Positions 3,951 through 35,572 of a DNA stretch of 64,000 bases are shown piece after piece (positions within the stretch are counted from its first letter, which is position 1; each line of letters opens with the position of its first letter). Source of the stretch: Iphione sp. A-MEVVRFRX5. Taxonomy: Eukaryota. Location of the stretch: positions 13,764,001 through 13,828,000 of the forward strand of contig OZ320314.1 of assembly GCA_976226885.1 (NCBI GenBank), in the 5' to 3' direction. Below the pieces are notes generated by a model. It made no database searches, was not told where the DNA came from, and saw only the letters and a program-made list of their open reading frames with translations. The position numbers were made by a program, and so were the translations under genes.

Positions 3951-6599
3951 TTGTCTCTTTAAAGTAGTTCATTTAACAGTGCAGAGATTATTTGTCAGCC
4001 AATAAGATACATATACAGTGCAGTAAATGACAAAGGAGCACACTTTTGTATGTCCTTGCAGCAATACTCAACAATATTATTATGTTTTGTTTCGAATACA
4101 GTCTTCTCTATCAGTATTCTGATGTATTAGCATTATCCTTGTATGGGATTACAATTTTCTTTACTATTACTGCAACACAGTCATGCATAGATTTATGATT
4201 TCTTTTGCTTGATATATTTTACACTTAGTTTCTGATTTTGATTCTGATTTTCTGCTCTGCCCTCACATTTCTGTATTTGCTTCCCTCTCTGTTGATTTCA
4301 ATCTAAAATTTGGAATAGATTGGTTTGGTGTCATCCAAGTAATTATGGCCAAAGATTAAGTACCTTGTAGAGTAGAAACTACCTTCCAAGCAGTCATGCA
4401 CTAATAAGGCCCACTAAAACAAGGTCTGTGTTTCTAGTAACCTAACTGACTCCAATTTTGACAAAAAAGGCAATTTTTGTTAGTCTTATTTCTTTAGTGA
4501 TTTCTTCAGAATAGATAAATCTCAAAACATATACAATACACCAGTGTTTCCCTTAGTTCCTCAGTTACCATATAAGAAAAGTTAAGATTGTTAAGATATG
4601 ACTATGAGTGATGGAAGGATTGTAAAGAATTGCCTAGCCTTTTCACTGGAACATTTGCATATAAAAACAGACTAACCTACCAGCAGTATTCTCTTATAGC
4701 TTGTTATACAATTCTTATTTTTGAACTATCCTCAGCATATGAATCACCAGGGGATTTGGATTCACAAATTAAAGGTTAGTCTCAAGTATCAATATGTTTT
4801 ACATTGGCTCCTTTCTTCAATGGTTCCAGGCAACTTGATCACAACCATTGACATAGAATATAGGAAATTATAGTCGAAGAGGCCATTAGTATAAGGTATA
4901 TGACAATACCATTGTATGTATATGTACACTTGAGTCCAAACTGAAGACTGAATGATTTTAGTCTCTCCACAGGTTGAGCTCATGAGACATCATCCACATA
5001 GATGAGAAAATGCAATTAGCTTTTAAAACCATACTGTAGGAGAAAACAGAATCTTTCACTTCTTAGCCTGTCCACCGCTGTCTTTTGATAATCTGATTGA
5101 AATGTGCTGAAATATTACTCCATATAGTTAGGTAATTACAGTTTTGTAATATATTTTAACTTCCAAATAAAAGTAGTCTGACAATTTTCATCACTTAATC
5201 TGCACCAATTAGCCTTTTTGCACCTACATGGAATATACCAAAATGTCAAATTTTAAAGTGTAAATAAAATTAGTTAAGATAAGCTACACAGTTTATCAAA
5301 ATGCTCTAAAATGCTCTAGTAAAAAGAACTCTCACTGGTTCTTCCATGGCTACATTTGAAGGTCTCTAAAATTTCAGGTCTTAATTGTCACTCAATAATG
5401 TGTAAGACACAATAGTTTCTATAGTGCTGTCTAACATGTCATCTTCATTTTTGACATCAGGATTCTGGAAATGAAATGGAAACATCCTCTATGAAATATT
5501 AGTGGTCAATATGTTGTCTTATTTATGTTTTATTAAATATATATGAAATCAGAGATATCTTTTGTCACACAATACCAGGATTTATATAAAACTTTTTCAA
5601 CTGAAGGCAAGATATAAGGAATGTTAACAGGAGTGAGGAGGATAGGCATGTCCAATGATGTCCAAATCTGTATATTATAGTACATTTCTGATTATCTATT
5701 TGACACATGAAACAATTTAATATTTTGTTCAAAAGAGTGATTCTAATAGATTAACTGTATTATTCATGCTATGACAAGCCTAGACATTTGGGTTTCAGTA
5801 AAAAATGTGCATTCAGGTGTTGTTGGGTTGCATTTTAGGATAAGCATACCATAAGACCACATTTCCATGTATATCTGTGTCTCTGTGTAATTTGTTTGTG
5901 TATGTTTTTACAGTGGGAATTAAGGACAATGATGTATACCAGGAGTGTCTAATGAATCTGTTTAGCACCTAGCATATTGTGTGGGTCTGTGCAGTATGTT
6001 TGGGGAATAGGAATTGTCCTATTTGACTGTCTGTGTATATATATTTGAAATAGGAACTATGCATATCCACTGGGAAACTAGAGGGCTCTATGGCTTATCC
6101 ATTATAGTGTACCAGACTAAGTCCTTCCTGAGTGACTTTGTGTCATGTCAGAGTGGGATTCTGATACCAGTGCCAACATTCACATTATGATGAATTAGAC
6201 ATGTGAAATCTAAGTAGGTATTGCACAAAGCAATTAGGACACTGACTATATATAAAGTAGGAATCCTGTAAATAAACAGGCATTCTCTCACTGCATTTGA
6301 AGAGAATTGCAACCACCAGAGTTTTACAAGTGAAATAAACAAATTCTTTCTGAATGATTTGGTTTATTCGACTGGTGATCTCTGCACTGAAAAGCCATTA
6401 GTCAACAGACCATGTTCATGTTATAATATCTATGATAGATAGGGTATGCTATTCTATGGCATTCTATGGCATATCCATTACAAAATGTTTCCAAATCTGA
6501 CAATATCCAATGAAATCTTAAGAAACCAAAAATGTAGGGTAAGGGAGGACCACTATATACCCAAAATACAGAGGATATGAGGCCAAGCCTATGCAAACA

Positions 6600-6960
6600 A
6601 GCATACCGCATTACTTGATTTGTCACATGATAGCATGCAGCATTGGTCAAAGTGTAATGTGATACCATAGAAGACAACTTGGCATATGGTTGGCATACAG
6701 TAATTGTCAATCTGTTATGTATTAACATACAACAATTAGTGAACTTAGTGATAGTATAAAACACTAGTTAACCTATTGTGTGATAGCATGTAGCATTGGA
6801 TGTTCTGTAGCATAATAGTTTAAGAGCATTGGTTAACCTGTCATCTGATAGCATATAGGATAGGTTGATCTGTTACATGATTGCTTTAAACATTGGTTGA
6901 TTGGTCATGTGAGAGCATACAGCATTTCTTTACCTGTTATATAACAGCATGCAGCACTTG
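6600..6960. repeat. Degenerate ~30-bp minisatellite just after the gene A stop (3'UTR); paralogous copy ~35270-35560
   Basis: Recurrent cattggttaacctgtcatgtgatagcatatag-like units, about 11-12 copies. Confidence 0.65.
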
Positions 6961-6973
6961 TCACTTGTCCCTG

Positions 6974-7024
6974 TCAATTGTTAAAACTCAGTCTGTCACA
7001 ATCCGACTGTTTTCTGAATTGGAG
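6974..7024 (-). CDS. Gene A exon 15 (LQFRKQSDCDRLSFNN*)
   Basis: ctgcag acceptor; TGA conserved in B. Confidence 0.75.
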   Translation of the reverse strand, partial: LQFRKQSDCDRLSFNN

Positions 7025-10000
7025 CTGCAGTAGCAAAAGTAATCAAAATATAGAACATTTTACCATTGAGCCCATTATATATTCTTCAAATGAAAATGGT
7101 CCTCTAAAACGGAATTGGACTTACCTTTACTTCTGTTACTTTTTCTTCTATTATTGTATAATCCCTGTAGTAATTACGCACCCATGGATGATATAACATG
7201 GATGATACTTGCATCCCCCGGGTGCACCCTACATATGCCATACCATAATAACAGAGCATTACGAAACTTCTGAAGACTGTACACTTATCGCAATACCTAT
7301 TCAATGTTTAACTATTTAGAAAGAAGAAAATTATATATACCTGAGAGATAAGGTGGTGAATACACTATATTAATGACTATTTATGATTTTTTTAAGAAAA
7401 AAGTGAATGCTCTAATTAAAGAACATTTAAGGATTTGATTAAGGAACATTTTATCAAAGAAATCTTTCTAAAAACCCTCACCTGTTAAGGCACTGACAAT
7501 CATACAGACAGCAAATGTGATGAGCATGGCGAATAATGCAAGCCACAGGTAGGATACAGAGTAAAACTTAATGAGGGGATTATCATACGGGCTGCAACAA
7601 ACAAAGACAGCAATCTTAAAATAGAATGACCAGATGTGACATTACAAATGAATGTGGCATCATATTCTGTATCTGTGATTAATATTGTGTTGAGCTGTAA
7701 CAGTAAATGAAGTACGCTAAACAGTTCTTGCTAGATGTATATATACCTGTTCCTTTTTACATATCTATTTGTTTGTCAAATGAAATGATCCTAAAATGGT
7801 GAAAATCCACACACTTTTATTGCATACAAATCAGATAGTTATCCTAATTATTATGGCTATTCATTTGAAATTGTAATATATGTACTAACATTTATTACAA
7901 TAAATCATGTTTCAGATTAATTTTTACTCTATGACTAATCTTTGGCAATGATCACCCATTGTTCCATCATCAGCAACCCAATCATCAGCAATTGATAACA
8001 TCTTTATTACTCGGTAACACTCAGACAAAAAAAAGACAGACTTGCCTTTGTCTAACCCTATGCTAACAGGCAAATGTTAGATTTTTTCCTTGACCCTTGG
8101 CAACCAATGGTACACTGTTTTGTAATTTGGGAGAAAAATGCTCATCTGAACAATGTAACAGGCACTGTTACCATACTTAGACCTAATTGATGAAACATAG
8201 TTTGTTTTTAGGGTTGACTACTTTACATGATAACATGCCATGTGGCTTTATACATACTAGTCTGGGGATATATTTGTTTAGTAAGCAGGTGTAATACCCC
8301 TGCTTCACTCATACATTTTTTTAACCTTATCCGGAAGAGTTACAAAGAACAGTAAGACATTTATGTCCTGTAATATCTTTTATTTCTTTCAATCTAAAAC
8401 CTTATACAGCCTATTAGTAACTGCTTTTGTTTCTTTTCCATCAGTTCTTCCCAGTGATGTCAGCAGATGTTTGGATCTTGACTCACTCTATTAGTTTTGT
8501 AAGCTAAGCTTCAGGAAATATGAGGATGCATTAGGAATCAGTATCCAATAATACCTTGCATTTCTGTCAAAAACATTGTCTATCTAATATGGCATCTCTT
8601 ACCAATATGTAAACTGCAAAGGGAGGAGGAGATTCTCTCTTACATTTGGTTTTAGTTGAAGAAAGCTCACAGCTTTTCAGGATTGACTGCAATAGTTGTT
8701 TGCAGGCTAAATGTATGACTTTTGTTTTTCAGGCTATAACAAATATTTTTCTGATTTAGTTATTTTTGTAGAAGCAGTGACCCTTAATGGTACTTTATTT
8801 TACTATGTGCCTCTTTGCCCTTGAGCTTGCATTTGATATCGCATAAATAGGCATACAGTCCACAGAACTTATCTCTCCAGTTTAAAAACCCAACAAACAC
8901 ATAATGTTTTCACAACTTTTTTAAAGGTCTCAAAAAAGCTGCAAATAATGTTATGAAATAATGTTTTTATAATGTTTCACACAACTTTTTAAAAGGTCTC
9001 TAAAAGAGCTTCATAAATTGTTATGAAAATTAATAACATTTTTACGTTTTCATAACATTCTTAAAAGGTTTCAAAAAAGCTGCAAATAAAGTTATGGTAT
9101 AATGTTTTTATGTTTTCACAACATTTTTAAAGGTTTGAAATAGAACTTCATGAAATGTAATGAAATAACATTTTTACAATGTTTTTACATTTATAAAATG
9201 TCTAAAAAGGCTGCAGATAATGTTTTGAAATTACATTTTTAAATTGTTTTAATAAGATTTTTAAAGATCTTGAAAGGAGGTCAAGGGAGATGGCAACATA
9301 TTAACCTGGTAAGAACAGGCAGACTCAGTGGCCAAATGGATAAGAGTGCTGACACCACCAGCAATGCAGAGGACATGGGTTCAAATCCCCAACAAGGCAA
9401 TATTTCACATCATGGAAAACCAAGACACTCCTTTATAAAAAGTTAAATTACATAAGAAAGGAGTATTCTAGGGAAGATAGAAGCATAAAGAGCAAAAAAG
9501 TATGATTTACATTTTGAATTTTGAAATTAAGATTATAATAAAATGTTTTGAAAAAGTTTTCCAAAAATGTTTTGAAAACATTTTTTGAAAACATTTTCAG
9601 AAAATGTTTCTTAAACATTTTCAAGACCATTCACTTCTATGTTTTTAACCCTTTGACGGCAGCATTGTAGTGTTGCGCATATCCTCCATGCAGCGGTACT
9701 TAGTAAAGGCGTAATCCGATAGAGGGCGAGACATGTACAGCGTCATCGCATAACGTACGTCATTGTGGTGAATCGGGATGGAGTTTTCATGTTTTAGGGA
9801 TATTATGGAATAGACATTATAAACTAATTGGATGCATTATTCTAAGGGATATTTCGAAATAATTAACTAAGAAATACATTCTGAATCATAAAGGATAAAT
9901 TTAATGCTTAAATGCACTACTCGCCGTCTCCACGGGAATGCCCTGATGCACTATTCACCCGGACCACGGGAATGTGTCAGTGCATTACTCGCCGTCAGAG

Positions 10001-13000
10001 GGTTAAAACTTTTTATAAAAACATTTTCAATTTTCCATTTAGGATAATGTTTTTTAAAAATGTTATTCTGGAGGCTCTATTCTGGAGAAGTTATACTCTC
10101 TCTTACAATAATGCATGCACCTTCTTACTACTTATATAAAGTATTAATTGGACCATTCCCAAATAATATAAATGGATAAATCTGTGTCTGGCCATCTTCA
10201 ATATAAATCTTTTGATAATGCTAACCATCTTTACAGAGTATATAAGCATCAATGTCAACTTTTTTAATAGAAAAAAAATAATGAGAAAGTCCATACTTAC
10301 TCAACTGAAGCCATAGCCATTGTGACATTTATTGACACAGTGGATAGAGCTGTCATGTTTGACATCCTAAAATCACATGTTGCTATGGTGGAATTGAGGA
10401 ATGTTCCCTGTAAATTGTTTGCATATGCTCCGAATCCCATCCAGGCTGCAAACACAAACCCTGAGATGCCTCCTACAGAAACACCCTATTAGAAAATTAC
10501 AGGGAAAAAACTCTTTTTGTCATGATTATGATGATGACATAATTATAAGTAAAAAACTGTTTTGAATGCAAATTGATCAAAAATGTAGATGAATAAAGAA
10601 ATTCTTACAATCCAGTTTATGAAGGGAATAAAAACTCCCAGAAGAAACATGGCTATGATTGGCCCTGAACATGCTCCAATGAATGTAGCCACTAGCTGTA
10701 TCAATGTTCCACCTAGTTGATCAACTCCAAGACCAAGGGCAGTAGAAGTTACACCTATTATCACAACTGAAAAGAGGAGGTATTCTAAAGAAATGACTTG
10801 GTTGAAAGTTGGTTTTCTTCTTCTCAATGGCCATACTTCCTATTACTTGGGCCAAGAAAAAATATATCTTAGTTTCTAATAATTTGACAAACCAAGTAGT
10901 TATGGAATATTTTACTTTGTCTTGTTTTGTAGATATCTTCAGAAAAAATGGGACTTTAGGGCCTTAGCTACCTACCAAATGTATCTTTTTAGCACTTAAC
11001 CAGAAACATGTACATGTCTATTTTTTCCTTTCACATATATGTTTATGCAGTGGAAACTTTGGTAAAAAACTAACATGGAATAATTGAATACACACTTGGA
11101 AATATGTCAGGACAGAGAACTGGTAACATGTGTCATATTGCTTCAAGACACTCTACATAACATGTAATAAAACCAGGTCTCGTGCATCATCTATGAGCAT
11201 GTGTGTTGCATTCATGAGAGAGAGGTGAGAGTCAACCGGAACTCAATGAAAGCCCCATAAAACATGATTTTGATGTTTTTAGCCATGCCCAGGTAAAGGA
11301 TGTGAATTCTTTTGTAGCAGTTAAGCCTCAACCCAAAACATTGTGTAGGAACTTAAACTTGTATTGTTTAGTCTCAGGCTGGAATTATTCCCACTTGAGA
11401 AGCAAATAGGTAGGACTCTTCTGGCTCAAGCCAGAAGGAGACAATTTAAGAGTTTTAAATTGTTTATACTTACGTGACCATGGCTAAGTTTAGAGTAAGA
11501 CTTTGTATATCACAGCACATTTTTTGTGAATAAACACAGTCTCTTACTGCACTTGAAGAGAATAACATCCAACACTTCTTTCCTGTGCAGACAGCTTTTA
11601 TATCAAAGCCAGCACTCATTCTACACCAAGCACAGGCTACACGTTTTTATTGGAAGACAGTTGTGAAGAAATATGGAAAATGAATTTGTAATTTAAGCTC
11701 TATTTTAATCAGAAGATTCCATCATGAACTTACCCAGTACTTTGGTTATGATGAGACCAGATGTCTCTGATACATTTGGCCATATTGCTTTCACAATGTC
11801 CTCATAGGCATTTGTAGCACCAGAGATCAGATTGGTGGATGCTGAGCTGTAATGATATTGCTATCGTTAATATTTTACCTAGGGACCAATAAAACCACCT
11901 TGCAAGTACATAGATATCATGTACTTTTCTGAGTATTTTACCTAATTATTTTAAGAGGCTTTACCTGAACATGTTCATATAAAGTACTACACAATTTGAT
12001 ATGATAACATGATATAATGGAAAACAGCAGACATAGGCTATACTTCTAGTCACATGTGGACACTTAATATGTCGATTCCAACATGAATCTACTTGAAACA
12101 AGCATGAAAATAGCTTGGGGGAGAGGGTATGTACATGTACATATTTCTATGTACACGTATATGTATACAAGTAGGAATATTTTATCATACACATTGACAT
12201 GCAGATTGAATAGTAGATAGATGAATAGAATGTGGCAAAAAGTCCATTTAGAGAGTTGTCTACTATTCCAGTGACTGTGCATATTTTGATTAAGCAAACT
12301 GAAAGTCTTTCAGATTTTACTCTATATCTTCATGCACATATACAGAACACAACAATTGAGATACTATGGAGAATGAAAAGCAAGAGGGTTTCCCATGCTG
12401 ACAATAGACCACATACCAGCCTGTTCACGAAAAATGAAGCCGTACTATAGCATCATTTCAAATCAGTAAACTTTAATATACTGAAGGGATTTTATCAAAC
12501 CTGAGTGAAGCAGCTAACATGCAGGCTATCAATATACCAGGTATTCCAGGAATATTCAAATCATGTATGATAAAATATGGAATGAGCTACAAAAGAGAAA
12601 CATTAAAGATGTTGGCAATACTCATGATGATAAAGAGTGCAGACTATATAAAAGATGCATAACTACATAATATAGTCATAACTGGGAATAACTGAATAAT
12701 CTCCATTGCAGGACTCTTTTGTCATAAATAGGACCTATCTATAGAGGGCTCATGGAAAAATGCATTCCTAGATTTTAATTTTTCTGCAGTCCTTAAAGTT
12801 ATATAATTATTTACATAACATACTTGGTTTGGATTGCCCACTTTCTTGCCTCTAATGGGATCACATCCTTTATATGTGTAGAAAGCAAACATGGACAGAC
12901 CAGATAATGCAGCAATGGTATGCCAGGCACAACTCACAACCAAAACAATCACCAGACATCTGCAATTTAATTGATGGCTTTTAGTTTGTTCATCGATTCA

Positions 13001-16000
13001 AGGAAGTACCACTATTATGCATTATATCATTAATAGTATTTACTGTGAATGAGAATCATTAGGCTGGTAATATTGCACATTTAATTTTTTGGCAGGGTAC
13101 AATCATTTATTATTGATACAAATGTACCATAATATATAAATTGGGCTGCAGTCTATTTTATTACAAACAAAACACATTGGACAACAGCATGGGAACCAAT
13201 TGTTAATTGTAAATTGTAAAATACCCAGTGAGTAAAATGTTATGTTTTGGTATTATGTAGATAGCTAGGCAACATCACAGACATGCATTACAGACACAGA
13301 CACCATAGTCCTAAGATGCCTCAGATGATGTATACCCAAGGCTTTGTATTGTAGTGACATAATGACATAGATCATAATTATGCTGGTGTCATGAACCTAA
13401 GCCTAGTGCTATGAAGTATTATGTTCAAGGGACCAATGCTGTTCATACAGAGTGAACCTTCCAGCTGACTACTGTGACAGGAGACCTGGCCTGGTCATGC
13501 CACACCAAAGGGCTATGAAAGTTTGTTAAATTAATTGAGGGTGTACAATGGGCAAACAACCAGGTCTTCACTCCTAAGTATAGCAAACATCCTCCTTTGG
13601 TTAAAAATCTGTATGGCCTGTGACCACCTTGGCATAGCTGTGGACTGTAATGGAAAGTGGGGATAGATTGCCATGTGATTTTAGTGTTCAACACTGACTG
13701 CATCTCCTCTGGGTTCATCAGGTGGCTCAACACCAGGATGCATGCCTTATCTGGGAAAACTACATTGAGTGCCAGAAACCAGTTCTGACTACCTTGGACC
13801 CATTCTCATGTTCCAGTCAGGCAATTTTCCTATCCAATGTAAAAGTTTTTCTTGGAAATAGAGAAATGGGTAGGAAACTTTTACTCTTTAAGTTGATAGT
13901 TCATTGAACTGTCAGACTCACAAGTTAAAACAATGTCTTAATAATCCTAACAACAGAGCAGCTCCATGACATGTGTGATCAGTCTAATCCATCTTTTTAC
14001 TAGGGTATGTACAAATAATATTCTCACTTCAAATTTGATTCTACACACAGCTTGAGAAGAATGCAGTTGATCACCTGTCCATTCATCTTAAGGTGGGTTG
14101 CTGAATCCTTCTCACATGAAAAGGCCTACACCTCCTTTTGCACATTTACTGAAAAAGGTCCCTATTGCCACCAGCAGTTTCTTTGTTTTTGCTGTCATTG
14201 AAGGATAATTGCTGGAGCATGTCAAAGATGTAGTAAGTGCCATTTCCCTTTCCTAGGATGATGAGACAAGCATTGATCTCACAACAATTTGTAAGCTCCT
14301 TTTCTTTTGGCATGAGTGCAATGCAATCTCACTGAGGCAGATGGTATACAAACCATTCTAGGTTTAAAATCTATATACACTTATTGTGAAACAAGGTTGA
14401 GCCCTCAACATAGTTCCCCTCCAAAATATATGAATCATAGCTCCCCTCAAAAATGCTGACAGCATACATACTTGACCTGGGAAATTAAGATCTCTCCCTA
14501 CTAAAAAACAAAGTGACCCCACCCTGAATGCATGCGATATAGTATACATGTATAAGAGCACACTCCTTCTGTTCTTCATCAATATCATGCAAATATACTA
14601 ATGGAAACCTGAATACATGAATTTTAAGCCTAATTCTTTCTTGGTCTTAGAGTCAGCTGGCACGATTGCACAGTGCCACATGTCATGCATGATCTGGAGC
14701 AGTCAGCTGATAATGCAATATGCTAGGTGCAGACAGTTTTGGACCTGTAGGAGCTTTCTGAGTGGATTTTGTCCCTCCCTGAGAGTCAGCTTATCTATAC
14801 TGGGAGCGACTTGAACCTCATTCATGCTGTTCTTCAGGCACTTCTAGCATCTTCTGCTGTGTGCCAATGACTGCCCCAAGTCACAGGACTGAAAGACAGA
14901 AGGGGCCAGTTCATAGAGGTGGATGTAACATAAGTATATATATATATAAATGTGTATACATTCCAGTCTGAGGTCTATCATTGCCAGGATCATATCCCTG
15001 GACCCTGCTCCTGTAAGTTGCTAATGGTATGGCCAAGAGACCCTTACCAATGCCCCATGACATTACCTAAGATGATGGTTTCTTTCAGGTTGCATGCAAC
15101 AATAGAGCAGTCCTGCAGAACTGTCATGCTGCTAATGCCAGGGCTTTTCATAGTGTCTGCCTTCTATCAGGTCATTACCAGAAGCCAGGGGTGAAATGGA
15201 CCAAACATGACATCTGATGTGGCTTCTTCATGGACAAAGTTATCTATTTGGTCAGGACATTTAGTGGTGCTAGGATGTTTCAGCAGGCTGCCAGTATGCC
15301 AGATTGGTAACACTTTGGGACATTACAATGTTTTTGAAGTATACACCTGATTGTTGGTGGTTTTGTTGACATTGAGCTTGTGTACCTCAAAAGAGTTTGT
15401 GCTTCACCATTTCAACAATGACACAATGAATTTCTAGTCCATTTTGTACATGCTTTCAGATAAAGGGGACTGATTTTGTAGGCAAAACAATCCTCATCAG
15501 GACACCTAACTCATTCAGTCTCGGGAGGAAGAAGACCTATTGCTTAAGATGACCATACCCCTGAGGTGGCAAATATCAGATGTGATGATGATTGACAGGC
15601 AGTGAACAACATTAGTGGAATGTGTAACAAGGCATGACAATTTTACTCAGTCTTCTTGCAAACACCTCTGATACCTGCAGTTACAGTGATTTAGCCATCA
15701 ATATATGGATGCACCAGTTGCTGGCTTTGGGGTTGGCCTCATCCAAAAAATCTTCTCAACAAACCCAGTGCCTCTTTTGAGGTTACAGGCAGTCACTGCC
15801 CAGCTTAGAGGGCCAATAATTGGATTCTGATATGTACAATCTGGCGAACAGGTACACAGACCCTCAACTATAGAGTTAGTTCCCAGTAGGGTTACAGGCT
15901 GCTGAAACCATTAGCCTAGCACATCCAAGAATAGGAACTATGCATATGCACAGAAAAGCTATAGGGCTCTATCGCTTACCCATTAAAGTGTACCAGACAG

Positions 16001-19000
16001 AGTCCTAATAAGCTCCTTCCCAAAGTGAGTTTTTGTCATGTCACATCGGGATTCAGATATCAGTTCTGACAATCACATTTTCAATGCCATATACTCTCCT
16101 TTTGCACCCTAAGGGAGGCTCTCTTACCTATTGCATTTGCATCAATGCTTTTATATGCACAGAAGAGACACCCCTTCAGGTCTAATAAACATGCATGATA
16201 TATGCTATACACATGCATATTAGAGACTGAAGTTTGAGCAGAGGGATGCTAGTCAGGTACAATTCACTGAAGTAAAACACTATTAATGATGCCTCTGGGA
16301 ACAAAGCCTGAGCCTACTTTTTACTCGACTGGATTTTGAGAAAAAATATTCAATAAGACAAGCCCAAAAGCACCAACTATATGGGAAGCTTGAGGCACTA
16401 AGGAGTCAAGATGTGGAAGAGTCTTCCACAGTCTGTTAAATCATAATTGAGAACAGACTATAAGAAGATTGTTGCTGCACAACATCAAAGGTAGTCCAAT
16501 AACTGTGAACTACTTCTGAGTACAGCAACTGGAATGTCATTTCTGTGGCAAGAGCAGAAGCTTCAATGAAGGGAAAAATATAGTTTATCACAGGATGAGC
16601 TATTTCCAGGGCATTTTCCTTCTATTACAGGCTTGGGTAATGAATGGTTATTGTCAGTGTTATTTTATACTAACATAGTTGAAAGAAGCTGAGCAAAGGA
16701 AAAAAATATTTAATCCCACAAAGAAAGACCTGTGAGACATCTGAGAAGATTAATAAAAATATCTAAAATTCAAATAAAAATTAGATTTTAATGTAAATCA
16801 TCAGTAACTCATGTAGTGTCATGAAAATTTGAGTGACAGTAATTTGTTAGGTATGGCAAATAGTTACCAGCTGGGAACTTACAGTTTAGCCATGCTCATT
16901 GTACGCACAGCAGAGTAGCGCTGCATTGAACTTTGTGATGTACCAAATCTTCCTATGTAATTTGCTCCTACTCCAAATGTACAGGTCCATATTGTATAGC
17001 GAATAGTTGGGTCAGCACTCACACTTGAAATGGTAGGAAAGAAAGTCTATAGTATTACATGCTTCTTTCATTTTCAACATGCCTGCAGACTATTTAAAAG
17101 AAGGTTGGATCTGACATTCTCCATTGTTTGCAATTAACAAATCTGTTCACCTCATGAACATCTACAAGAAAGCTATTTATTTAGGCAGGCTATATTTTTA
17201 TTTTTCAAGAGGCAAAATTAAGATTCTCTAGCTTAGCTGGATTTTGAGTGCTACATTGTAAGGAATGCACTTTGTATCAGACAGTGGTACTGGGAATTGT
17301 ACTAAAGGCATGATTATACTGGAAACATTGTATAGTGGAAACATTTAATTTTATGTAGGAATACAATTTTTAAAAAACACATGATTGATATCTCCACAAT
17401 ATTTGTAATATAGTATGACTCATACAAATATCAATCAAGTTGAATGCATGATTTAGAATAGATGTAGACCCATATACTCACCGGAAACCACAATCAAATG
17501 TATGTATCTAAACTGCATATGAGGGAAAAAATTTGTTTCCGATCGGGGTTTAGGTATGGACTTGTCACATACATAACTATAGTGTTTATCGATTCAAAGC
17601 AAATATTGCTAAAATTTAGTAAAGATAATTTTTTCTGACAGCCTGCTTTACCTGTATGTGTATTCTTCAACAACTTGATATAGACGCCTATGATCTATGA
17701 TTGTATACAATGATACCTTTGGTGACTTATTATCATATTTGCACATTACTGATCAAAGACCTACGTTTTATTTATAAGCTCATAAACTGTAGTTCTTTTT
17801 AAACTACTCGTATTAACAATGTCAATTCCAATCTATTATCAAAAGTGTACTTAGAGGTTTAGTTTATGATACTGTTATGGCCAGACCTTAACATACTGGA
17901 GGCAAACTCTCAAATAAAGTTTAGATGTTTATTCTTGAGAGGTAAGAATGCAACTGCACTTGCTTTTATACACACAGTCATAATGTGCAGAGCTAGCATG
18001 AGGAGTAAAATTACATGCTTACCGTGCTGAGTAACTCGGTGCAGAGTTTATTACTGCTCTGCACAACAATACAATAACTCTAAGCACCTTGAGAAAGTAA
18101 ACAATTTATGCTACATTTGTAGATAATAATGTTGTTTTGATAAAATTGAAATGACACACAGAAAATCTACATTGGCTTATGATTTCTAATAGTGATAATG
18201 AAATTATTTATCAATAAGCAGCATTTAAGACAACATTCTTGTTACACTGTTATTAGCAACCATCAAGAAAGCCTTTAACAAAGAAACTTTGCTTCCAGTA
18301 GTCTGTTGAGAACTGACACAGGCAATATGTTAGAGGTAATTTTCATTTTACCAGACAAATGTTCTGGTGAAAGATTAGACAGTGATTTCCAATCACAGAC
18401 CCATAATCATTCTTGCTTGAATCATAATGAAATTTCTATTATTTAAAGATTAATGATGCTTCATTTATTCTTAAAATATTAACATATCAATTTTCATTAA
18501 AGAGGTCAAATATCATGGTTGGGCAGGTTATTGGCAACAAAGATGTTTCCTAAACAGGCCTAGGCAAGAGACATCTGTATGAGCTTCTCATTTAAACTCA
18601 ACATTAGAAATCCAATACCTCTCATTATGCTAAATATGATGTATATACAGATACTTACTCAGCAATATTGTGTCGATCCCACATACCAGTAATAGCAAAA
18701 ACATCATCAATACCACCAACAGAATGTATAGCCTGAATAAAACAAAAGCTCCATATGAAGGTTACAATATACATAATATCTTTGACTTCAGGTGTTTCTT
18801 CTCAGAAACTGCCTAGTGATTTTACAATTATATTTCATGCCCAAAAATTTCACAAATGTTTAATTGGTTATTTTATCTATTTCTATTTCATTGCACAATG
18901 GCACTTGGCAAAGTCTTTGAATCATTTTTTGTTCAAATCTCTCACATCTATAATAATGCATAATATCTATACTTTTATGCAGAAAAATTTTAGTGAACTC

Positions 19001-22000
19001 TTATAATATGAGACCTAGTTCTCAATTTTACCACTATTTTTATATAGTTAATTATTTTGATAAAAAAGACATTATTCGAAAATTATTACTATGAATTATG
19101 TTACACCTTAAAAAAAGATAAAGTAAAATAAATGACAATATAGACGAAATATTATTGAAAATAAGCCTCTTGAGACTGCACACACATTTAAAAAACATTT
19201 ACTAACAAATGTCAATAGCATCACCTATTAGGTGAGGTCTCTGGAGACATGAGAAAGAGACATACGAAAGAGCAATGAACTGTTAGCTTTGGCCATTGTT
19301 AAAGAATAAACTTCCAGTCAGCATGAAATTCAATGGGTAATCTTTATTCCTGAGGAACATTCAGCAACAATATACATACACAACTGATTCAAACCTCTCT
19401 GCGAACATCACTCATATACAATCCAAAACTCCCTCTGCGGCCCTCCGCGGCCCTCCGCACCTCCGCAGAATGAACACTCCCTCCGCACAGCAAACACCCT
19501 CGGCTGAAACATGAACACCCGTCCCTCTGCTGACCCTCACAACAGAAGATTTGCATACAATGCCTCATTGAATAACAAGTATCAGCTGATACACCTCTAG
19601 AGACTAACATGCGAGAGGACAATGAATATGGATAGCAACAGGAGTTGAACAAGATAATGCACAGAATTGACTATAAGCATAAATTCATATTGACTGGTTG
19701 GGGGAGTGGTGAACTTCTCACCCTGTATCGTAAGCCTATACCACTGACTGCTCATGGCAAAACATAGCCGAGGATTCCAGTAAAGCACACACTGGCTATA
19801 ATAATACAGGAGCGCATCATGTATGCCTTCTATGAATTATGAGCAGATTTTGAAATTCTGTGTTACAAATCCATAATTTAACAATTCAATTCTTTCTCAC
19901 TTTAATTTGCTGTGAGAAATGGGTAAACGAAGAGATTCGCCTTCTCCATAACCGATATAAGGTGTCACTTCACTAATGCAATGAACATCAGTTCTGATCT
20001 CAAAAGGCAGAATAGGGAAGTGGTCTTAAAAATATTATGGATATGCATTGTCATGTGCAACCAGGGCTGAAATCCCTAAAATCTTTGGACAGAAGCCAAG
20101 AGGGCTGTCAAGTGAAATGATCAATGTTAACACAGAACAATCTGGTTAACTTCAATGCCAGACTTCTTTTTTATGTAACCCTCTCCAAATGCAGTGACAG
20201 ATTACCTGTGGCCTAATCGCTACAAACAGAACCTTGGTGGATTATGTAATACTGAATATTTAAATACATACAACACATTTTACTGTTTGCAATATTTCTT
20301 CATTTTGATGGTCCAACCAACTATTATCAGATCAACTTATTGGCAGCTGTGGCTCAGACTAACCTATCAGATAATATTATTGGAGCTACAAGTCTGATGA
20401 TGCCTATTCATCATACTATGTATATGACAAAGACTTAGTATAGCCACAAATGGTTGTATTGTGCAGGTGATCTGGTTACAATCATTGTCACAGTCCAAAA
20501 GAGAAAATGTGTTTTGGTAACAAGCCAAACATCAGCAGCTTGAAGTACAAAACACTGGCATTGCTGGCATTGTTTCTGTGTGTGTGTGTCATATGTTAAA
20601 ATTGGAGGGGGAAGTTATAGCAAAATATTTTTTACCTTTATGCATACTGTGAGTAGGCCAGCAACCATGACCATACATTGAAACACATCAGTCCATATGA
20701 CTGCTCTGATGCCACCCTTGGAAAAACAAATAGTACAGTACAGTGCAAACACAGATCTGAACATATGAACTCAGAGGGCAACCCCATATAAAAGACAAAA
20801 TGGGACATTAATCATACCCCATTTTAGTCTGTATGACTAGATCAGGTAAAAGGACATCTCATTATTAAGGGCAAAATTGCCTGGTCCCCTTAGTGTTCTT
20901 AAATTAGAGTTACTACTGTTTTTATTTACGATGAAGATATTCAGTAAATATTTTACTAGTACTTATGAGGCTAATTGTACTCACTAGGCATGTATAAATA
21001 GTAGTGATAACTCCTATGATCAACACCATGCCCCATACAGGGAATCCAGTCACTTGAAAATAGAAATAAAAAGAGGAGCTTCTGTGTATTTTGTACATAA
21101 CCTACCCCAACCAGAATAAAGTAGAAGAAATGTTAAGAATAAGAATAAGAATAATTTTATTGGACCTCTCCATTTGACGGAGCTATCATGGTACAATATG
21201 TATAGAAAAGTGAGTTATAAACGAGTTTGTGAAAAGAGTATAAAGGCAACTCATTTTGCTAATATGAAAAATTTGAAACTCACTTGCTTGCAAGGCTATG
21301 GATGGTCCAAAAAAGTCTATACATGTGACCAAAACCTGAAAGAGTTACAAATTACTGTCTAAAGATTGATTCTAAAGCACTTGGGGCTGTGGTGTACAGG
21401 TAGGTATTGTGAAGCTAAACATGACTGCATATAAATATCTGTTCAGATGACAACTCACATTTCCTTTGGACACTCAACTCTGAGTTAAAAATCAAATCAT
21501 TGAGGACAGTATTCTGGGAAGAGACCATGTCAACATAGACCCCCAAAGTATTTGGCCTTATAAAAAGGGATAGCGAAAAATGCTCAATAAGAAAAAGACC
21601 AGATCTTCCAGACCAACATTTGGTTTCTTCAACCAAATATCGCTTAACAGCTGTTTACAGGAACACTGGTTATCTGGAGTATGGCAAGTTTGATAAATCA
21701 GCATTATAGAAGTGGCAAACTTGATGGAAAAAATTCTAGTGAATTTGATGAGGTAAAGTCCTAATGGTTGCATATTTAATGAATAATCATTCTAACAGTC
21801 CCAGATATGATGAATATGTGTGAAAATGTGCAAATAAGGTAGACCTTTGCAGGATGTATCATCTATTCACATATATACTTTGCTTCAACAAAGCCAAGCT
21901 ACTAAATGCTACTTGCATATTTAGATGTGCTTGTGTTAAAATTTTGGTCAATGACCAACCCAAACATGGTGCAAATACACTGCAAATGTAATACAAGGAC

Positions 22001-25000
22001 ACAAGTATGAAAACCAGTAACATATGTTCTCAAATGTTCCATAAATAATGACACATATGCAAAGTGAAGTATATTCATAATAGTATGTGTGCTGGTGTCT
22101 GTTAAACTATTGATATTAAAAGAAGCTATTGTCATAAAATAATCACTTCATGAACCCTTATCAAATAACCATTTATAAACATCCTTTTCATATCATTCAT
22201 AATCTTGTTTGTGAAGAAAAATCTGATAGAAATGGAAAAAAACAACTTATAATAGTCTTAAACCTACCAGGTTTACTAAGCTTGCTGCACTTGCTAATAT
22301 TGCCACGAGTTTTGACTTGAACCGCAATTGAAGGTACTATAAAACATCACATACATTGCATGTATTAAATAATGTACTACAGACATATCACTGTGGTTAA
22401 TACTAGACAGGAGTCTAACCATACTCATGTATGTAAAGTCATTGTTTATTCTCAAAAATAAAGTTTGGTGATTATATGCGATTAACAATCAACATATGGA
22501 ATAGTATTAGTTGTTCCCTGAGCTCCTGATTTGTATCACCATATCATGAAGTTGAAATCTACATGTATCAGCATATCATTCTCATATGTGTTGTAGAAAG
22601 TGTACACACTACCTTGTTAGAGGGCAATATCATGAACCTAGCAGTTTATGCAGTAAGGAATTTAATAATACAACAGCATCACATATGTTACAGTAACATG
22701 ATAACATAATAAGAGAGAACTCTTTAATAAATATATGTATAGTGAACTGAAATCAGGTAGTTATAGCATAGTAGGAAGAACTTAATTAGGATACATATGC
22801 CTAAATATAAATGGATGTATGTGTGTGAGGGATTGATTAAACTTGACCACCATTATCAACATCAACAAATTCAATGTAAAGTCGATTCTATGTTTAACCC
22901 CTTCTGGACCACATCATTTCAGTAAACCACCTTAGTATAGCAGCATGTTTGAGTGTTTTCATTGATTTGATGGAACTAAGTATTATATCAACTTTATCTG
23001 TATACCAAATTACATTTCTCTAAATGAATATGGATGTCGATAAATAATTTTAGATGAATTAAAATGAAATTGTACTGTAAACACCACTGTTGCAATGTTT
23101 GCAGCATGTCAAAAGTTACATCACGAATGGAAAATGCTGGAAAATGCTGGAAACGCTGTACATACCTATATACACTATGCAAGAAGGTTATGAGTATGAG
23201 TCATATCAAAGACATCTGGTAAATTCTTGAATGATCAAATAGAGAGAGTATGACAAGTCGAATATGTCTCTGTGAATAGCCCGAAAGTGTTGCGTTATGA
23301 AATGACGTAACATTTGTTGAATCATTAGCATATGAACATGTTTATGTTAATATATCCAATATAATCCGGTATTATTTGGTCATGTGTATTGGGTATTCTT
23401 TTCTTTTGCAAATGTGCTCTGCATTCTTCATTGAAAAAATTATAATGCGCCACAGGAAAAGCAATATGTTGCTATGCAAACAATGAGATCATCGTGTGCA
23501 GAGCATCAATTTTAACCATGGAGGAGCTAAAGAAATGCATTTATTGACAAAGGGTGAATGCAAAATACATATCTAGATATACATGAGCTTGCATATATAT
23601 ACAACCAAAAATGTTATTACATGTAAGTCTGTAATCCTCAATGTTGTTATATATACCAAATCTGTGCCATTGTATCTGTGTTGTATATGGTGACACAAAG
23701 TACATTATATTCCAGTCTATCAATTCCTGATCCATTATTGGAGACAATAGAAAGGGGACAGAACAAACAGGCCATTTTTCGGAAATCGTACATCGCTACT
23801 AAGGTAACTTCAGACACGAAATTATTTTTTCCGGAATATTCCGTATGATCTTCATACATATAAGGAGGAAATGGTGTTGTTAGAGGATGAAATAATCCTC
23901 AAGTAGTAAAGCATTTGGTATGCATCTCAGCTTATAGATATCCATGTGTGTCTTTATAGCAGAAATACAAGGCAATATTTAAGCATATAGTTTTTGTCAT
24001 GCTTTGTAGTTTAGTGGCAACCTCAGTCGAGGGAACAAAACGTGTTCCTTCTATAAGTTTGGTCTGCAATAAGGGAACGCTTCCTTGCTGAGTCTCCAAA
24101 ATTATATGATGACCAGCATGAAAGAAAACCTGGTGTTAATACAGGTATGATATTAGTAAAACCTATGACATTTGACTTCCAGAAATTTCAGAATATTGAA
24201 ATTCACATTTTTCTTTGTTCAATCTGATCTAAGTCATACAGGCTTACCACATGATGTTGGAAGAACCTGTGGCAAGGACCAGCACTGAACATGTCTGCAG
24301 TATCTGGTCTGTAATAAGACATTGAGTGTCTCCCCATGAAAAGAACAGAAAAGTAAAATTACTGCTGAACTACTTCATGCTCTTGTCTCTCATTCCATCA
24401 AAGGCTGTGATGTGCCAAAGGATAAAGCAGTTCCTTATTGAGGTCATGCAGAGGTGAACATTGCAGAATGCGCGTTTGCAGCTCCAGACTCACTTGAACT
24501 CTTCTTGGAACTTGATGCAGCATACATGACAGTTACACCTCAAACCACAATTCTGTGGTAGGTGTTCTGTGTGATACTCGGCATCTGCTGATGCAACAGC
24601 TGACCTGGGACATACTGGAACATCCTCATCATCGTTTTTGTCTGCTAGCTGACGGACGAGTTCTTCTCAATATTGCAGTTGGCTGAATCAAAAAACGAAA
24701 GGAAACATTCAATAAAAAGTCCAGCAGTAAGCATGTTTACAACTAGACTTGCAGACCCCAGTTCAAAGACTTTATAATTTTTTCGGATATGCATCATGTG
24801 AGGAGGTAGTCTTCTAAATGCCTTTCATAGTAACACATTCCTTTGTCCAACAAATTATCCTCGTAATCGGAAATTTTTCTTGAGTTCTGCATCGAAAATC
24901 TTTTCTGTTATGTGAGAGCTACTTTGCAATAACTGTTATTCCAGAATAAATAAGACTTACAGCACAACGTTATCGACCCTTGTTGAGCCCTGGGAGCTGG

Positions 25001-33250: not shown

Positions 33251-35572
33251 TTCATTTAACTGTGCACTGTATTTCCTCCCTTCTTTATCGATTTCAATGT
33301 AATTTTGGAACAGATTGGTTTGGTGTCATCCAAGTAATTGTCACCAAAGATTAAGTACTTTGTAGAGTAGAAACTACCTTGCAGGCAGTCATTCACTCAT
33401 AAGACCTACTAAAACAAGGTCTGTGTTTCTGACTCCAATCTTGAAAGAAGGGCAATTTTTGTTAGTCTTATTTCTTATGTGATTTCTTCAGAATGGATAA
33501 ATCTCAAAACATATACAATACATCAGTGTTTCCCTTAGGTCCTCAGTTACCAAATTACAAATGCTTTATTAGATATAACTATAAGTGATGGTTCTAGGAT
33601 TGTAAAGTATTGTCTAGTCTTTTCACAGGAACATTTACATATAAAAACAGACTAACCTCGCTTGTTACACAATTCTTATTTTTGATCTATCCTCAACATA
33701 TCAATTCTGAGGGGATTTGGATTCACCAATTACAGGTCAGTCTCAAGTTTCAATATGTTTTACATTGCAACCTTTTTTCAATGGTTTCCTTGTAACTCGA
33801 TCACAACCATTGACATAGAAAAGAGCCAATTATAGGTGAGGAGGCCATTAGTCTAAGGTATGTGAAGATACCTTTGTATGTATATGTACACATGAGACCA
33901 AGGTGAAGACTTAATGATTTAAGTCTCTCCACAGGTTGATCTCATGAGACATCATTGACATGGAAAAATCCAATTAGTTCTTAACACCATACTGTAGGAG
34001 AAAACAGAATCATTCACACCTTAGCCTGACAACCTCTGTCGTTTTGTCATCTGATTGAAATATGCTGAAATATTACTCAGGATAATTATGTAATTAGAGT
34101 TATGTAATATATTTTAACTTCCAAATAAAAGTAGTCTGACAATTTTCTACTCTTGATCAGGACCAATTAGCCTTTTTGTACCTACAAGGAATATACCAAA
34201 ATGTCAAATTTCTTCAATAAATTTGAATAAAATTAGTTAAGATAACCTACAGTGTAGATCAAAATGAATTTTGTTTGAAATGTGAGATACAGTAGAATCC
34301 CATCCAGCAGGCAAATCAATTTGAAGGGAATTCAAGAATACAGATAGGTTTTGCTTCTCAATAGTGTATCTACAAACAAACCACTCTAGTAAAGAAAACT
34401 CTCACTAGTTCTTCCATGGCTACATTTGAAGGTCTCTAAAATTTCAGGTCTTGATTGTCACTCAATAACTTGTAAGACACAATAGGTTCTGTAGTGCTGT
34501 CTAACATTTCATCTTCATTTTTTACACCAGGATTCTGGAAATAAAATGGAAACATCCTCTGTGGAATATTAGTGGTCAGTATAATGTATTTTTAATTATT
34601 GTATTAAATAAATATGAAAATAAGAGATAACCTTTCTCACACAATACCACGATTTATATAAAACTTTTCCAACTGAAGGCAAGATATAAGGAATGTTAAC
34701 AGGAGTGAGTAGGAAAAGAATTGATGTCAAAATCAATAAATTACAGTGCATTTCTGATTATCTTTTTGACACATGAACCAATTTAATATTTTGTTCAAAA
34801 GAATAATTCTAATAGATTAACTGTATTATTCATGCTATCACAAGACTAGCCATTTGGATTTCAGTAAACAGTGTGCATTTAGGTGCTGTTGGGTTGCATT
34901 TTAGGATAAGCATACCATAAGGCCACAATTCAATGTGTAACTGTCTCTGTGAAACTTGTTTGTATGTGGTTTTACAGTGGGAATTGAGGACAATAATGTA
35001 TACCAGGAGTGTCTAATAAATCTGTTTAGCACCTAGCATATTGTGTGGGTCTGTGCAGTATGTTTGGGGAATGGGAATTGGCCCATTTGACTGTCTGTGT
35101 ATACATGTTTTAAATAGGAACTGTGCATATCCAGTGGGAAGCAATAGGGCTCTATGGCTTATCCATTACAATGTACCAGACAGAATCCTCCCTAAGTCAG
35201 TTTGTGTCATGTCAGAGGGGATTCTGTTACCAGTTTCACATTCACCTGAATTAGACATGTGGTTCTGATATAGCTGTTGCAATTTGATTGGCATACAGTA
35301 TTTGTCATGTTATAACATACAACAATTAGTGAACATATAACATGAAAGCATACAACACTAGTCAACCTATTCTGTGATAGCATATAGCATTGGTTGTTCT
35401 ATTGCATGATAGCTTAAGAGCATTGGTCAACCTGTCATGTGATAGCATATAGAATTGGTTGATCTGTTACATGATTGTATTAAACATTGGTAGATCTTTC
35501 ATTTGAGAGCATACAGCATTTCTTTACCTGTTATACATCATGCAGCACTGTTCGACATGTCACTTGTCTCTG

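What the first reader, a model, noticed from the sequence alone, without database searches (positions are those of the whole stretch)
12824..17023. Buried Arg moves from TM4 (B) to TM7 (A), with a more polar pocket in A
Seen: in exon 7, A has GANYIGRFGTSQ and B has GASFIGLFGTSQ (AGA 16950-16948 vs CTA 43196-43194). In exon 8, A has SCAWHT and B has SCALLT. By-eye alignment puts Y/F251 at NIS W255, R/L254 at NIS M258 (the vSGLT Y263 inner-gate position) and H/L289 at NIS V293, all pocket positions. B has Arg140 in TM4 where A has Val. Each paralog therefore has an intramembrane Arg on a different helix, and only A adds Asp144 and His289. Inference: a reciprocal charge rearrangement of the binding site, i.e. 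two near-identical transporters with different substrates.
Basis: partly seen in the sequence, partly recalled or inferred. Interest (0 to 1): 0.78.

Follow-up and report, generated by a model that had tools for sequence, protein, structure and literature searches.

The report
Diverged substrate pockets in tandem SLC5 transporters
Two neighbouring sodium-coupled transporter genes, part of an array of at least 15 copies in an invertebrate genome, differ mainly at residues that line the substrate pocket, so they probably carry different cargo, but the "moving arginine" is one lineage losing an old arginine and then gaining a new one.

Summary
On the minus strand, gene A has V140, D144, Y251, R254, W288 and H289. 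Gene B has R140, C144, F251, L254, L288 and L289. The cited codons are exact.

Both genes are intact 15-exon SLC5 (NIS/SMVT/SMCT-type) genes of 600 and 605 aa. They are 84.5% identical, not near-identical (dS 0.25, omega 0.33).

- 251 = NIS W255
- 254 = NIS M258 = SMVT L270 (inner gate)
- 289 = NIS V293 = SMVT L305
- 140 = the conserved NIS Y144 / SMVT Y156, which binds the substrate carboxylate or a Na+

A and B differ at 11 of 19 SMVT pocket and gate positions, against 73 of 519 elsewhere (p = 2e-5). All four inner-gate positions differ.

The "reciprocal swap" needs re-polarising. A and B are two of at least 15 tandem paralogs. R254 is ancestral (13 of 16 exon-7 copies). B and its sister gene lost D140, D144 and R254 together, and B alone then gained R140 (AGC to AGA). 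A's W288/H289 recurs independently in another paralog.

Pocket divergence is well supported. Different substrates remain an inference: no model, expression data or assay was available.

The parts
5381..25899 (-). Gene A: 15-exon SLC5 (SSF) transporter gene, 600 aa. Exons: 25899-25558, 22336-22268, 21335-21284, 21052-20985, 20716-20636, 18732-18659, 17023-16883, 12959-12824, 12586-12501, 11846-11734, 10766-10609, 10485-10301, 7591-7482, 7228-7125, 5464-5381.
   Evidence: All splice sites are AG/GT, the ORF is open and there is a single stop. Exon 1 passes the Pfam SSF threshold.
34436..51584 (-). Gene B: 15-exon paralog, 605 aa. Exons: 51584-51243, 50547-50479, 49304-49253, 49139-49072, 48966-48886, 44946-44873, 43269-43129, 40915-40780, 40562-40477, 39368-39256, 38272-38115, 37993-37809, 36193-36084, 35827-35724 (GC donor), 34534-34436.
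   Evidence: Exon lengths match A through exon 14. Exon 1 passes the Pfam SSF threshold.
21284..21335 (-). A exon 3 (TM4 in NIS numbering, TM3 in LeuT numbering): VLVTCIDFFGPSIALQA. V140 is at 21329-21327 (GTC) and D144 at 21317-21315 (GAC).
   Evidence: Position 140 aligns with SMVT Y156 and NIS Y144.
49253..49304 (-). B exon 3: VLRTGMCLFGPSIALQA. R140 is at 49298-49296 (AGA) and C144 at 49286-49284 (TGT).
16883..17023 (-). A exon 7 (TM7 in NIS numbering, TM6 in LeuT numbering). N250 is at 16962-16960, Y251 at 16959-16957 and R254 at 16950-16948 (AGA).
   Evidence: Alignment without gaps to NIS, SMVT and SMCT1.
43129..43269 (-). B exon 7. S250 is at 43208-43206, F251 at 43205-43203 and L254 at 43196-43194 (CTA).
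12824..12959 (-). A exon 8 (TM8 in NIS numbering). W288 is at 12925-12923 (TGG) and H289 at 12922-12920 (CAT).
   Evidence: Position 289 maps to NIS V293 and SMVT L305 through P0084.
40780..40915 (-). B exon 8. L288 is at 40881-40879 (TTG) and L289 at 40878-40876 (CTT).
10609..10766 (-). A exon 11 (TM11 in NIS numbering, TM10 in LeuT numbering). V413 is at 10692-10690 and I417 at 10680-10678. Position 417 aligns with SMVT inner-gate residue F431.
38115..38272 (-). B exon 11. I413 is at 38198-38196 and S417 at 38186-38184.
25558..25899 (-). A exon 1 (TM1-3). L62 (25716-25714) aligns with SMVT inner-gate residue F79. V71 and F89 align with NIS V76 and Q94.
51243..51584 (-). B exon 1. I62 is at 51401-51399. 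Positions 71 and 89 are I and L.

Best explanation
A and B are two intact, selectively maintained members of a lineage-specific tandem array of at least 15 genes. The array encodes SLC5 Na+/solute symporters of the NIS/SMVT/SMCT type, and its substrate pocket has been repeatedly remodelled.

Shown:
- The array as a whole carries an Arg at position 254. This is the inner-gate and pocket-floor position (SMVT L270, NIS M258), which is never Arg in 18 distant full-length homologues sampled here or in the three solved relatives aligned at this position (NIS M258, SMVT L270, SMCT1 I256).
- The array has replaced the conserved TM4 Tyr (SMVT Y156, NIS Y144) with a highly variable residue: D, V, Y, I, Q, S or R.
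- In the clade (P663,(A,(B,P752))), the B+P752 ancestor changed D144 to C and R254 to L, each by a two-nucleotide codon change.
- B's R140 codon (AGA) is one nucleotide from P752's S140 codon (AGC).
- A kept R254 and D144.
- A's V140 and W288/H289 are the states seen in the unrelated paralog P630. The 288/289 codons differ by single nucleotides from the B/P663 state.
- A/B differences are about 8-fold enriched at pocket and gate positions, including all four inner-gate residues.

Inferred:
- The ancestral state at 140 was Asp (as in P663), so the B+P752 ancestor also lost D140 (GAC to AGC), B then gained Arg140 by a single change, and A changed D140 to V.
- The pockets differ in charge and shape, so A and B recognise different substrates or bind the same class differently.
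- In B, the guanidinium at 140 sits where SMVT Tyr156 hydrogen-bonds the substrate carboxylate. It would bind an anionic group directly, much as SiaT Arg135 does.
- In A, Arg254 rises from the pocket floor and is probably balanced by Asp144.
For: Gene models are intact, with omega 0.33 overall and no exon above 1. Polarised changes are 36N:33S on the B lineage and 24N:29S on the A lineage, so neither gene is decaying.

Position mapping comes from phmmer alignments to SMVT, NIS and SMCT1 chains. Residue roles come from PMC13454448 and from the NIS preprint 10.1101/2022.04.07.487502.

Enrichment: 11 of 19 pocket positions against 73 of 519 elsewhere, p = 1.9e-5. With the NIS site list it is 6 of 11, p = 0.003, and all four inner-gate positions differ, p = 5.6e-4.

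Among 7 full-length paralogs, pocket entropy is 0.90 bits against 0.38 bits elsewhere (p = 2e-4). P350, P384 and P424 keep nearly the same pocket (1-2 of 19 positions differ) while differing at 63-76 other sites. So the pocket is conserved within types and differs between types.

The topology (P663,(A,(B,P752))) has support 1.0 in two independent 3-kb loci.

The 18 distant homologues have Y or F at 140 in 16 of 18 (L and I in the other two) and never R at 254.

SiaT R135 on TM3 forms a salt bridge with the Neu5Ac carboxylate. It aligns within one helical turn of position 140.
Against: - No 3-D model of A or B could be made, so side-chain orientation and any R254-D144 pairing are inferred from SMVT and NIS only.
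- No expression data were found.
- The TM8 mapping (289) is transitive through a roughly 40%-identical homologue, because exon 8 alone finds no PDB chain.
- Several of the 11 pocket differences are conservative (L/I, V/I, L/V).
- R254 occurs without an acidic partner at 140 or 144 in seven paralogs (P470, P529, P569, P630, P857, P903 and frag637, where exon 3 is unknown). A salt bridge is therefore not a general requirement.
- Only 7 of 16 paralogs are available at full length.
- Gene conversion among tandem copies could blur the polarity.
Confidence: 0.6

Rival explanations
1. The fixed positive charges (R254 in most of the array, R140 in B) act as built-in surrogates for a co-transported Na+. 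They would then change the Na+:substrate stoichiometry or electrogenicity, not substrate identity. Precedents in other LeuT-fold carriers are a Lys or Arg at a Na+ site (ApcT K158, CaiT R262; from my own knowledge).
For: Position 140 aligns with NIS Y144, which ligates the Na+ that NIS authors call Na2. Canonical Na-site residues are otherwise kept: S57, D187 and the S-[ST]-A-S-T motif at 350-354.
Against: Position 254 is not a Na+ ligand in NIS or SMVT. In SMVT it is a hydrophobic gate and pocket contact. Many other pocket residues that do not touch Na+ also differ. No electrophysiology is available.
Confidence: 0.15
2. One reading: a reciprocal, two-gene charge rearrangement in which the buried Arg moved from TM4 (the B state) to TM7 (the A state).
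For: A has R254 and V140, and B has R140 and L254. The two positions belong to the same inner gate in SMVT.
Against: R254 (AGA) is shared by 13 of 16 exon-7 copies and is ancestral. L254 (CTA) is shared by B and P752. R140 is unique to B, and its codon is one step from P752's AGC. So the only possible direction is loss on TM7 followed by gain on TM4, with a charge-free intermediate that P752 still represents.
Confidence: 0.08
3. The pocket differences are functionally neutral or reflect relaxed constraint. B, the most deviant copy, would be a redundant gene drifting towards loss of function.
For: B differs from every other full-length paralog at 11-12 of 19 pocket positions. No expression evidence could be obtained. 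B exon 14 has a GC donor rather than GT.
Against: B has a complete 605-aa ORF across 15 exons. Its lineage shows 36N:33S changes, against a neutral expectation of about 3:1. Non-pocket positions differ at only 14%. GC-AG with a GCAAGT donor is a standard minor splice class.
Confidence: 0.1

Closest known systems
Human SMVT (SLC5A6; PDB 26va-26ve; PMC13454448)
   Same: SMVT ranks first or second among solved chains for every exon that finds a PDB chain. It has the same LeuT-fold SLC5 architecture. Its pocket and gate residues align column for column with the variable positions here: F79/Y156/L270/F431 = 62/140/254/417, M266/M267 = 250/251, and Q301/L305 = 285/289.
   Different: SMVT has Tyr156 and a hydrophobic Leu270. 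A has V140 and R254. B has R140 and L254. Identity is only about 30-35% in the aligned exons. No orthology is implied and the substrates are unknown.
NIS (SLC5A5; PDB 7uuy, 9zfl; bioRxiv 10.1101/2022.04.07.487502)
   Same: Exons 1 and 7 align without gaps. The iodide-site residues W255 and V293 and the Na+ ligand Y144 correspond to positions 251, 289 and 140.
   Different: The key iodide residues Q72 and Q94 are L67 and F/L89 here, so iodide transport is unlikely. In NIS, charged substitutions at pocket positions abolish transport, whereas this array carries native charges there.
SMCT1 (SLC5A8; PDB 7sl9) and mollusc SMCT-like expansions (PMC11939762)
   Same: SMCT1 is the best solved-structure hit for exon 1 (2e-13). 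Lineage-specific tandem expansion of SMCT-like genes is already reported in a bivalve (16 genes).
   Different: SMCT1 has W253 and I256 at positions 251 and 254, and Tyr at 140. The published expansion study found no well-supported selected sites and did not examine pocket residues.
SiaT sialic-acid symporter (PDB 5nv9; PMC5931594)
   Same: SiaT is an SSF member with an Arg (R135) on the same helix as B's R140. That Arg forms a salt bridge with the substrate carboxylate and is essential for transport.
   Different: SiaT is a distant bacterial relative. R135 aligns at column 143, not 140, with indels beside it. This is an analogy, not an exact positional match.

Membership tests
SSF / SLC5 (Pfam PF00474) | Profile match above the curated threshold | tested here: met
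   Exon 1 of A scores 32.9 bits and exon 1 of B scores 34.3 bits, against a cut-off of 22.8. The genome-wide exon hits include both genes.
SSF / SLC5 (Pfam PF00474) | Conserved core motifs and Na+-site residues: WTDxFQ, QxxxQRY, the S-[ST]-A-S-T segment of TM9, and the GP of TM11 | tested here: met
   Both proteins contain IWTDVFQ (185-191), SQSSMQRY, SLS[S/T]AST (348-354) and CSGPIIAMF. The match to the NIS STAST segment is at motif level only.
SSF / SLC5 (Pfam PF00474) | 13-TM LeuT-type fold | not testable with these tools
The fold is inferred from alignments, nearly gap-free, of exons 1, 7 and 11, and of exons 2-8 through P0084, to solved SLC5 chains.
NIS/SMVT/SMCT subgroup (SLC5A5/6/8/12) | Closer to these members than to the SGLT or CHT members | tested here: met
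   The only significant PDB hits of the exons are SMCT1, SMVT and NIS. SGLT1 and CHT1 appear only weakly, through P0084.
NIS/SMVT/SMCT subgroup (SLC5A5/6/8/12) | Conserved TM4 tyrosine (NIS Y144, SMVT Y156) that ligates a Na+ or the substrate carboxylate | tested here: not met
   A has V140 and B has R140. Only 2 of the 15 array genes keep Tyr. 16 of 18 distant homologues have Y or F.
NIS/SMVT/SMCT subgroup (SLC5A5/6/8/12) | Uncharged hydrophobic inner-gate residue on TM7 (NIS M258, SMVT L270, SMCT1 I256) | tested here: not met
   A and 12 other exon-7 copies have Arg, and one has Lys. B and P752 have Leu, so they do meet this feature.
SiaT-type carboxylate-binding arginine on TM3 (LeuT numbering) | Arg at the column of SiaT R135 | tested here: inconclusive
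   R135 aligns to our column 143, three residues from B's R140, with indels flanking. It is on the same helix and roughly the same face, but not the same column.

The most novel reading that the evidence does not exclude
In this invertebrate SLC5 array, the hydrophobic inner gate of NIS/SMVT/SMCT has been replaced by a charged module formed by residues 140, 144 and 254. In this reading the module is an Asp-Arg lock that evolution toggles to switch substrate class. The array would preserve the whole path: D140/R254 (P384 type), then the charge-free state (P752), then the relocated Arg140 (B). That would be a natural series showing how a buried charge migrates between helices of a LeuT-fold transporter without loss of function.
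Probability: 0.2. Interest if true: 0.6.

Novelty: new variant of a known kind. Interest (0 to 1): 0.4.

Why it matters
SLC5 carriers of the NIS/SMVT/SMCT type take up iodide, vitamins and short-chain carboxylates. How their shared pocket is retuned for different substrates is a current structural question. This array offers a set of natural, closely related variants that differ mostly in the pocket. It includes an unusual buried Arg at the inner gate, a charge-free intermediate, and a copy with the Arg relocated to the helix and position where SMVT binds the substrate carboxylate. If expressed and assayed, the set could show which pocket residues set substrate class and Na+ stoichiometry. The substrates of expanded SMCT-like families in marine invertebrates are unknown, and this would also address them. 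On present evidence it is a well-founded hypothesis about ordinary paralog specialisation, not a new kind of system.

Tried and rejected
1. Expression. Two searches for public sequencing runs (A exons 8-12, and A exon 1) listed none.
2. Fetching the whole array. Only 5 extra paralogs are therefore full length, and the others are known for exons 3-5 and 7. States at 288/289 for five more came from one pattern search. I did not use pattern searches further, so as not to work around the cap. Exon 8 of P569 remains unknown.
3. Structure prediction of A and B was not run. No model-based distances exist.
4. Exon 8 and exon 10 alone find no PDB chain. TM8 was mapped through P0084.
5. The protein-representative search with exon 1 found nothing above 47% identity, so this species or its close kin is not in that library. 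Cluster look-up gave no names.
6. Whole-exon gene conversion as the source of A's W288/H289 is rejected. A's exon 8 is closest to P663 and B (91-92%), not to P630 (88%). A conversion tract of only a few bases cannot be excluded.
7. B as a pseudogene is rejected.
8. Chance clustering is rejected.
9. The equivalence of NIS M258 with vSGLT Y263 could not be checked by sequence. The vSGLT and SGLT1 hits were weak (E 6.6e-4 to 2.7e-5); the SGLT1 hits end at query position 140, before TM7, and the vSGLT alignment was not displayed. It rests on motif knowledge and on SMVT L270 being named an inner-gate residue.
Full report
**Observation**

The minus strand reads GANYIGRFGTSQ in copy A, with AGA at 16950-16948. 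It reads GASFIGLFGTSQ in copy B, with CTA at 43196-43194. A self-comparison shows a tandem duplication of about 26-29 kb. A lies at roughly 2-27 kb and B at 31-52.6 kb, and their introns are 75-92% identical.

I built gene models using full-length homologues retrieved with exon 1, open frames and splice sites. Each gene has 15 exons. All splice sites are AG/GT except a GC donor (GCAAGT) after exon 14 of B. Exon lengths are identical through exon 14. The proteins are 600 aa (A) and 605 aa (B).

| Position | A | B |
|---|---|---|
| 140 | V | R |
| 144 | D | C |
| 251 | Y | F |
| 254 | R | L |
| 288 | W | L |
| 289 | H | L |

These come, with codon coordinates. The finding's limits, 12824 and 17023, are the end of exon 8 and the start of exon 7.

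The copies are 84.5% identical (93 of 600 residues differ). Over exons 1-13, dS = 0.25, dN = 0.08 and omega = 0.33, and no exon exceeds 1. "Near-identical" overstates it.

**What the genes are**

Exon 1 of each gene passes the Pfam SSF (PF00474) threshold. Against solved structures the exons hit only SMCT1 (7sl9), SMVT (26va) and NIS (7uuy, 9zfl). I found no species name.

**Position mapping**

- Exon 7 aligns without gaps. Y/F251 = NIS W255 = SMVT M267 = SMCT1 W253. R/L254 = NIS M258 = SMVT L270 = SMCT1 I256. N/S250 = SMVT M266.
- Exon 1 gives 62 = SMVT F79, 71 = V88 (NIS V76), 82 = Y99 and 89 = Y106 (NIS Q94).
- Exon 11 gives 410/413/414/417 = SMVT L424/A427/I428/F431.
- Exons 3 and 8 are too short or too diverged to hit PDB chains alone. 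They were mapped through homologue P0084, which aligns over 230 residues to SMVT, NIS and SMCT1 with a single one-residue gap. This gives 140 = SMVT Y156 = NIS Y144, 144 = SMVT V160, 285 = Q301, and 289 = SMVT L305 = NIS V293.
- The residue letters printed in the alignments match the residue names used in the papers, so chain and native numbering agree in these regions.

**Roles of these positions in solved relatives**

In SMVT (PMC13454448):
- The intracellular gate is formed by F79, Y156, L270 and F431.
- The substrate carboxylate hydrogen-bonds the Tyr156 hydroxyl.
- M266, M267, L270, A427, I428 and F431 line the hydrophobic pocket.
- L305 makes van der Waals contact with the substrate.
- Y156A and M267A abolish transport, and L270A severely reduces it.

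In NIS:
- The iodide site is Q72, V76, M90, Q94, W255, V293, L413 and F417.
- Y144 ligates a Na+.

**More than chance?**

I took the 19 mappable residues that the SMVT paper names as gate or binding residues.
- A and B differ at 11 of these 19, against 73 of 519 other positions in exons 1-13 (odds ratio 8.4, one-sided Fisher p = 1.9e-5).
- With the NIS site list the count is 6 of 11 (p = 0.003).
- All four inner-gate positions differ: L/I62, V/R140, R/L254 and I/S417 (hypergeometric p = 5.6e-4).

Both lineages remain constrained. When the differences are polarised with five outgroup paralogs, the B lineage shows 36 nonsynonymous to 33 synonymous changes and the A lineage 24 to 29. The neutral expectation is about 3:1.

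**Context changes the story**

A Pfam scan of the whole genome shows the window is C2:13,764,001-13,828,000. A and B sit in a minus-strand array of SLC5 genes from 13.35 to 13.90 Mb, and further clusters lie on C1 and C11.

Exon-7 and exon-5 searches find 16 close copies. Fourteen are genes on C2, one is a lone degenerate exon-7 fragment at 13,637,260, and one is a gene on C4. I obtained full sequence for five further paralogs. All five have open exons 1-11. For the rest I have exons 3-5 and 7.

States across the array:
- **Position 254:** Arg in 13 of 16 (AGA in 12, AGG in 1), Lys in P663 (AAA), and Leu (CTA) only in B and P752.
- **Position 140:** D in 6, V in 3, Y in 2, and I, Q, S and R once each, with R only in B.
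- **Position 144:** V in most, D in P350, P663 and A, and C in P752 and B.
- **Positions 288/289:** TTG CTT (LL) in ten copies, including B, P752 and P663. TGG CAT (WH) in A and P630. WN in P529 and WF in P470.

Among 18 distant full-length homologues, position 140 is Y or F in 16 (L and I in the other two), and position 254 is never Arg. R254, together with loss of the Tyr, is therefore a hallmark of this array.

**Polarity**

Maximum-likelihood trees of two independent 3-kb loci, which are mostly intron, both give (P663,(A,(B,P752))) with support 1.0. With that topology:
- The B+P752 ancestor changed D144 to C (GAT to TGT) and R254 to L (AGA to CTA). If the ancestral state at 140 was Asp, as in P663, it also changed D140 (GAC to AGC). 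Each is a two-nucleotide codon change.
- B then gained Arg140 by one change (AGC to AGA).
- A kept R254 and D144. It changed D140 to V (GAC to GTC) and L288/L289 to W/H, one nucleotide each.

A's exon 8 is closest to P663 and B (91-92%), not to P630 (88%). The identical V140 / W288 / H289 combination in A and P630 is therefore convergent, or at most a conversion tract of a few bases.

Among the seven full-length genes, pocket positions are more variable than the rest (0.90 against 0.38 bits, p = 2e-4). P350, P384 and P424 share almost the same pocket (1-2 of 19 positions differ) despite 63-76 differences elsewhere. The pocket is conserved within types and differs between types, which is the pattern expected for specialised transporters.

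**Mechanism (inferred)**

Positions 140 and 254 belong to the same inner gate in SMVT, so they should be neighbours beneath the substrate.
- In the D140/R254 copies they could form an ion pair.
- In A, the acid is one turn away, at 144.
- In B, the only charge is Arg140. It sits at the site where SMVT binds the substrate carboxylate and NIS binds a Na+.

There is a precedent on the same helix. SiaT Arg135 forms a salt bridge with the sialic-acid carboxylate and is essential (PMC5931594). It aligns three residues from position 140, with indels nearby.

The main rival is that the fixed charges replace a Na+ and change stoichiometry instead of substrate. Neither reading could be tested here.

**Limits**

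- No model of A or B could be made, because a spliced protein has no reference for the folding tool.
- No sequencing runs were listed.
- Several pocket differences are conservative.
- R254 lacks an acidic partner at 140 or 144 in several copies.

**Comparison with what is known**

Tandem expansion of SMCT-like SLC5 genes in a mollusc is published (PMC11939762). That study gave no pocket analysis and found no well-supported selected sites.

A and B are members of the SSF/SLC5 family and of its NIS/SMVT/SMCT branch by homology. They fail two functional hallmarks of that branch. Both lack the TM4 Tyr, and A lacks the uncharged TM7 gate residue.

**Verdict**

The "reciprocal swap" is really loss of an ancestral charged triad followed by a B-specific gain of Arg140, within a much larger diversifying array.

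Noticed in passing
G000:C2:13,345,000-13,905,000 (the window is 13,764,001-13,828,000); also C4:100.50-100.51 Mb, C1:151.2-151.55 Mb and C11:91.5-91.85 Mb: A and B lie in a minus-strand tandem array of 14 SLC5 genes on C2, with one close copy on C4. More distant SLC5 clusters lie on C1 and C11. About 100 PF00474 exon hits were found genome-wide.
   Followed up: partly
window 21327-21329 and 12920-12925 (A), compared with C2:13,629,4xx and C2:13,625,521-13,625,541 (paralog P630): A and the phylogenetically separate paralog P630 share the same codons GTC (V140) and TGG CAT (W288 H289). A's exon 8 as a whole is closer to P663 and B. This is either convergence or a very short conversion tract. Across the array, V140 always goes with W288, and D140 always goes with L288/L289.
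   Followed up: partly
G000:C2:13,637,260-13,637,397: A lone exon-7-like fragment (VSANTTICCTIWTFIFGVEASYMGRFGISQSSMQYYSAVHTLTMVR) lies between two array genes. It carries odd replacements and is probably a pseudogene remnant. In the tree it groups with P663.
   Followed up: partly
window 2057-2350 (minus strand); the duplicated counterpart is near 31337-31627: A reverse-transcriptase fragment (Pfam RVT_1, E = 3.9e-11) lies just 3' of gene A. The region is part of the duplicated block, so the retroelement insertion predates the A/B duplication.
   Followed up: partly
window 35718-35723 (B) versus 7119-7124 (A): The donor after exon 14 is GTAAGT in A but GCAAGT in B, which is the GC-AG class. 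If the site is not spliced, both frames would end six codons later (VSPIPF* in A and ASPILF* in B).
   Followed up: no
window 5381-5383 (A stop) versus 34436-34453 (B): A's stop codon TAA is CAA in B, which extends B by five residues (QDLKF). A also has two consecutive start ATGs (25902 and 25899) where B has one.
   Followed up: no
window 13100-16300 and 52000-56000: Two blocks are richer in G+C (42-44%, against about 34% elsewhere). One lies inside intron 7 of A, which is 3.9 kb compared with 2.2 kb in B. The other lies upstream of B. Their ORFs have no Pfam match, and they are likely inserted repeats.
   Followed up: partly
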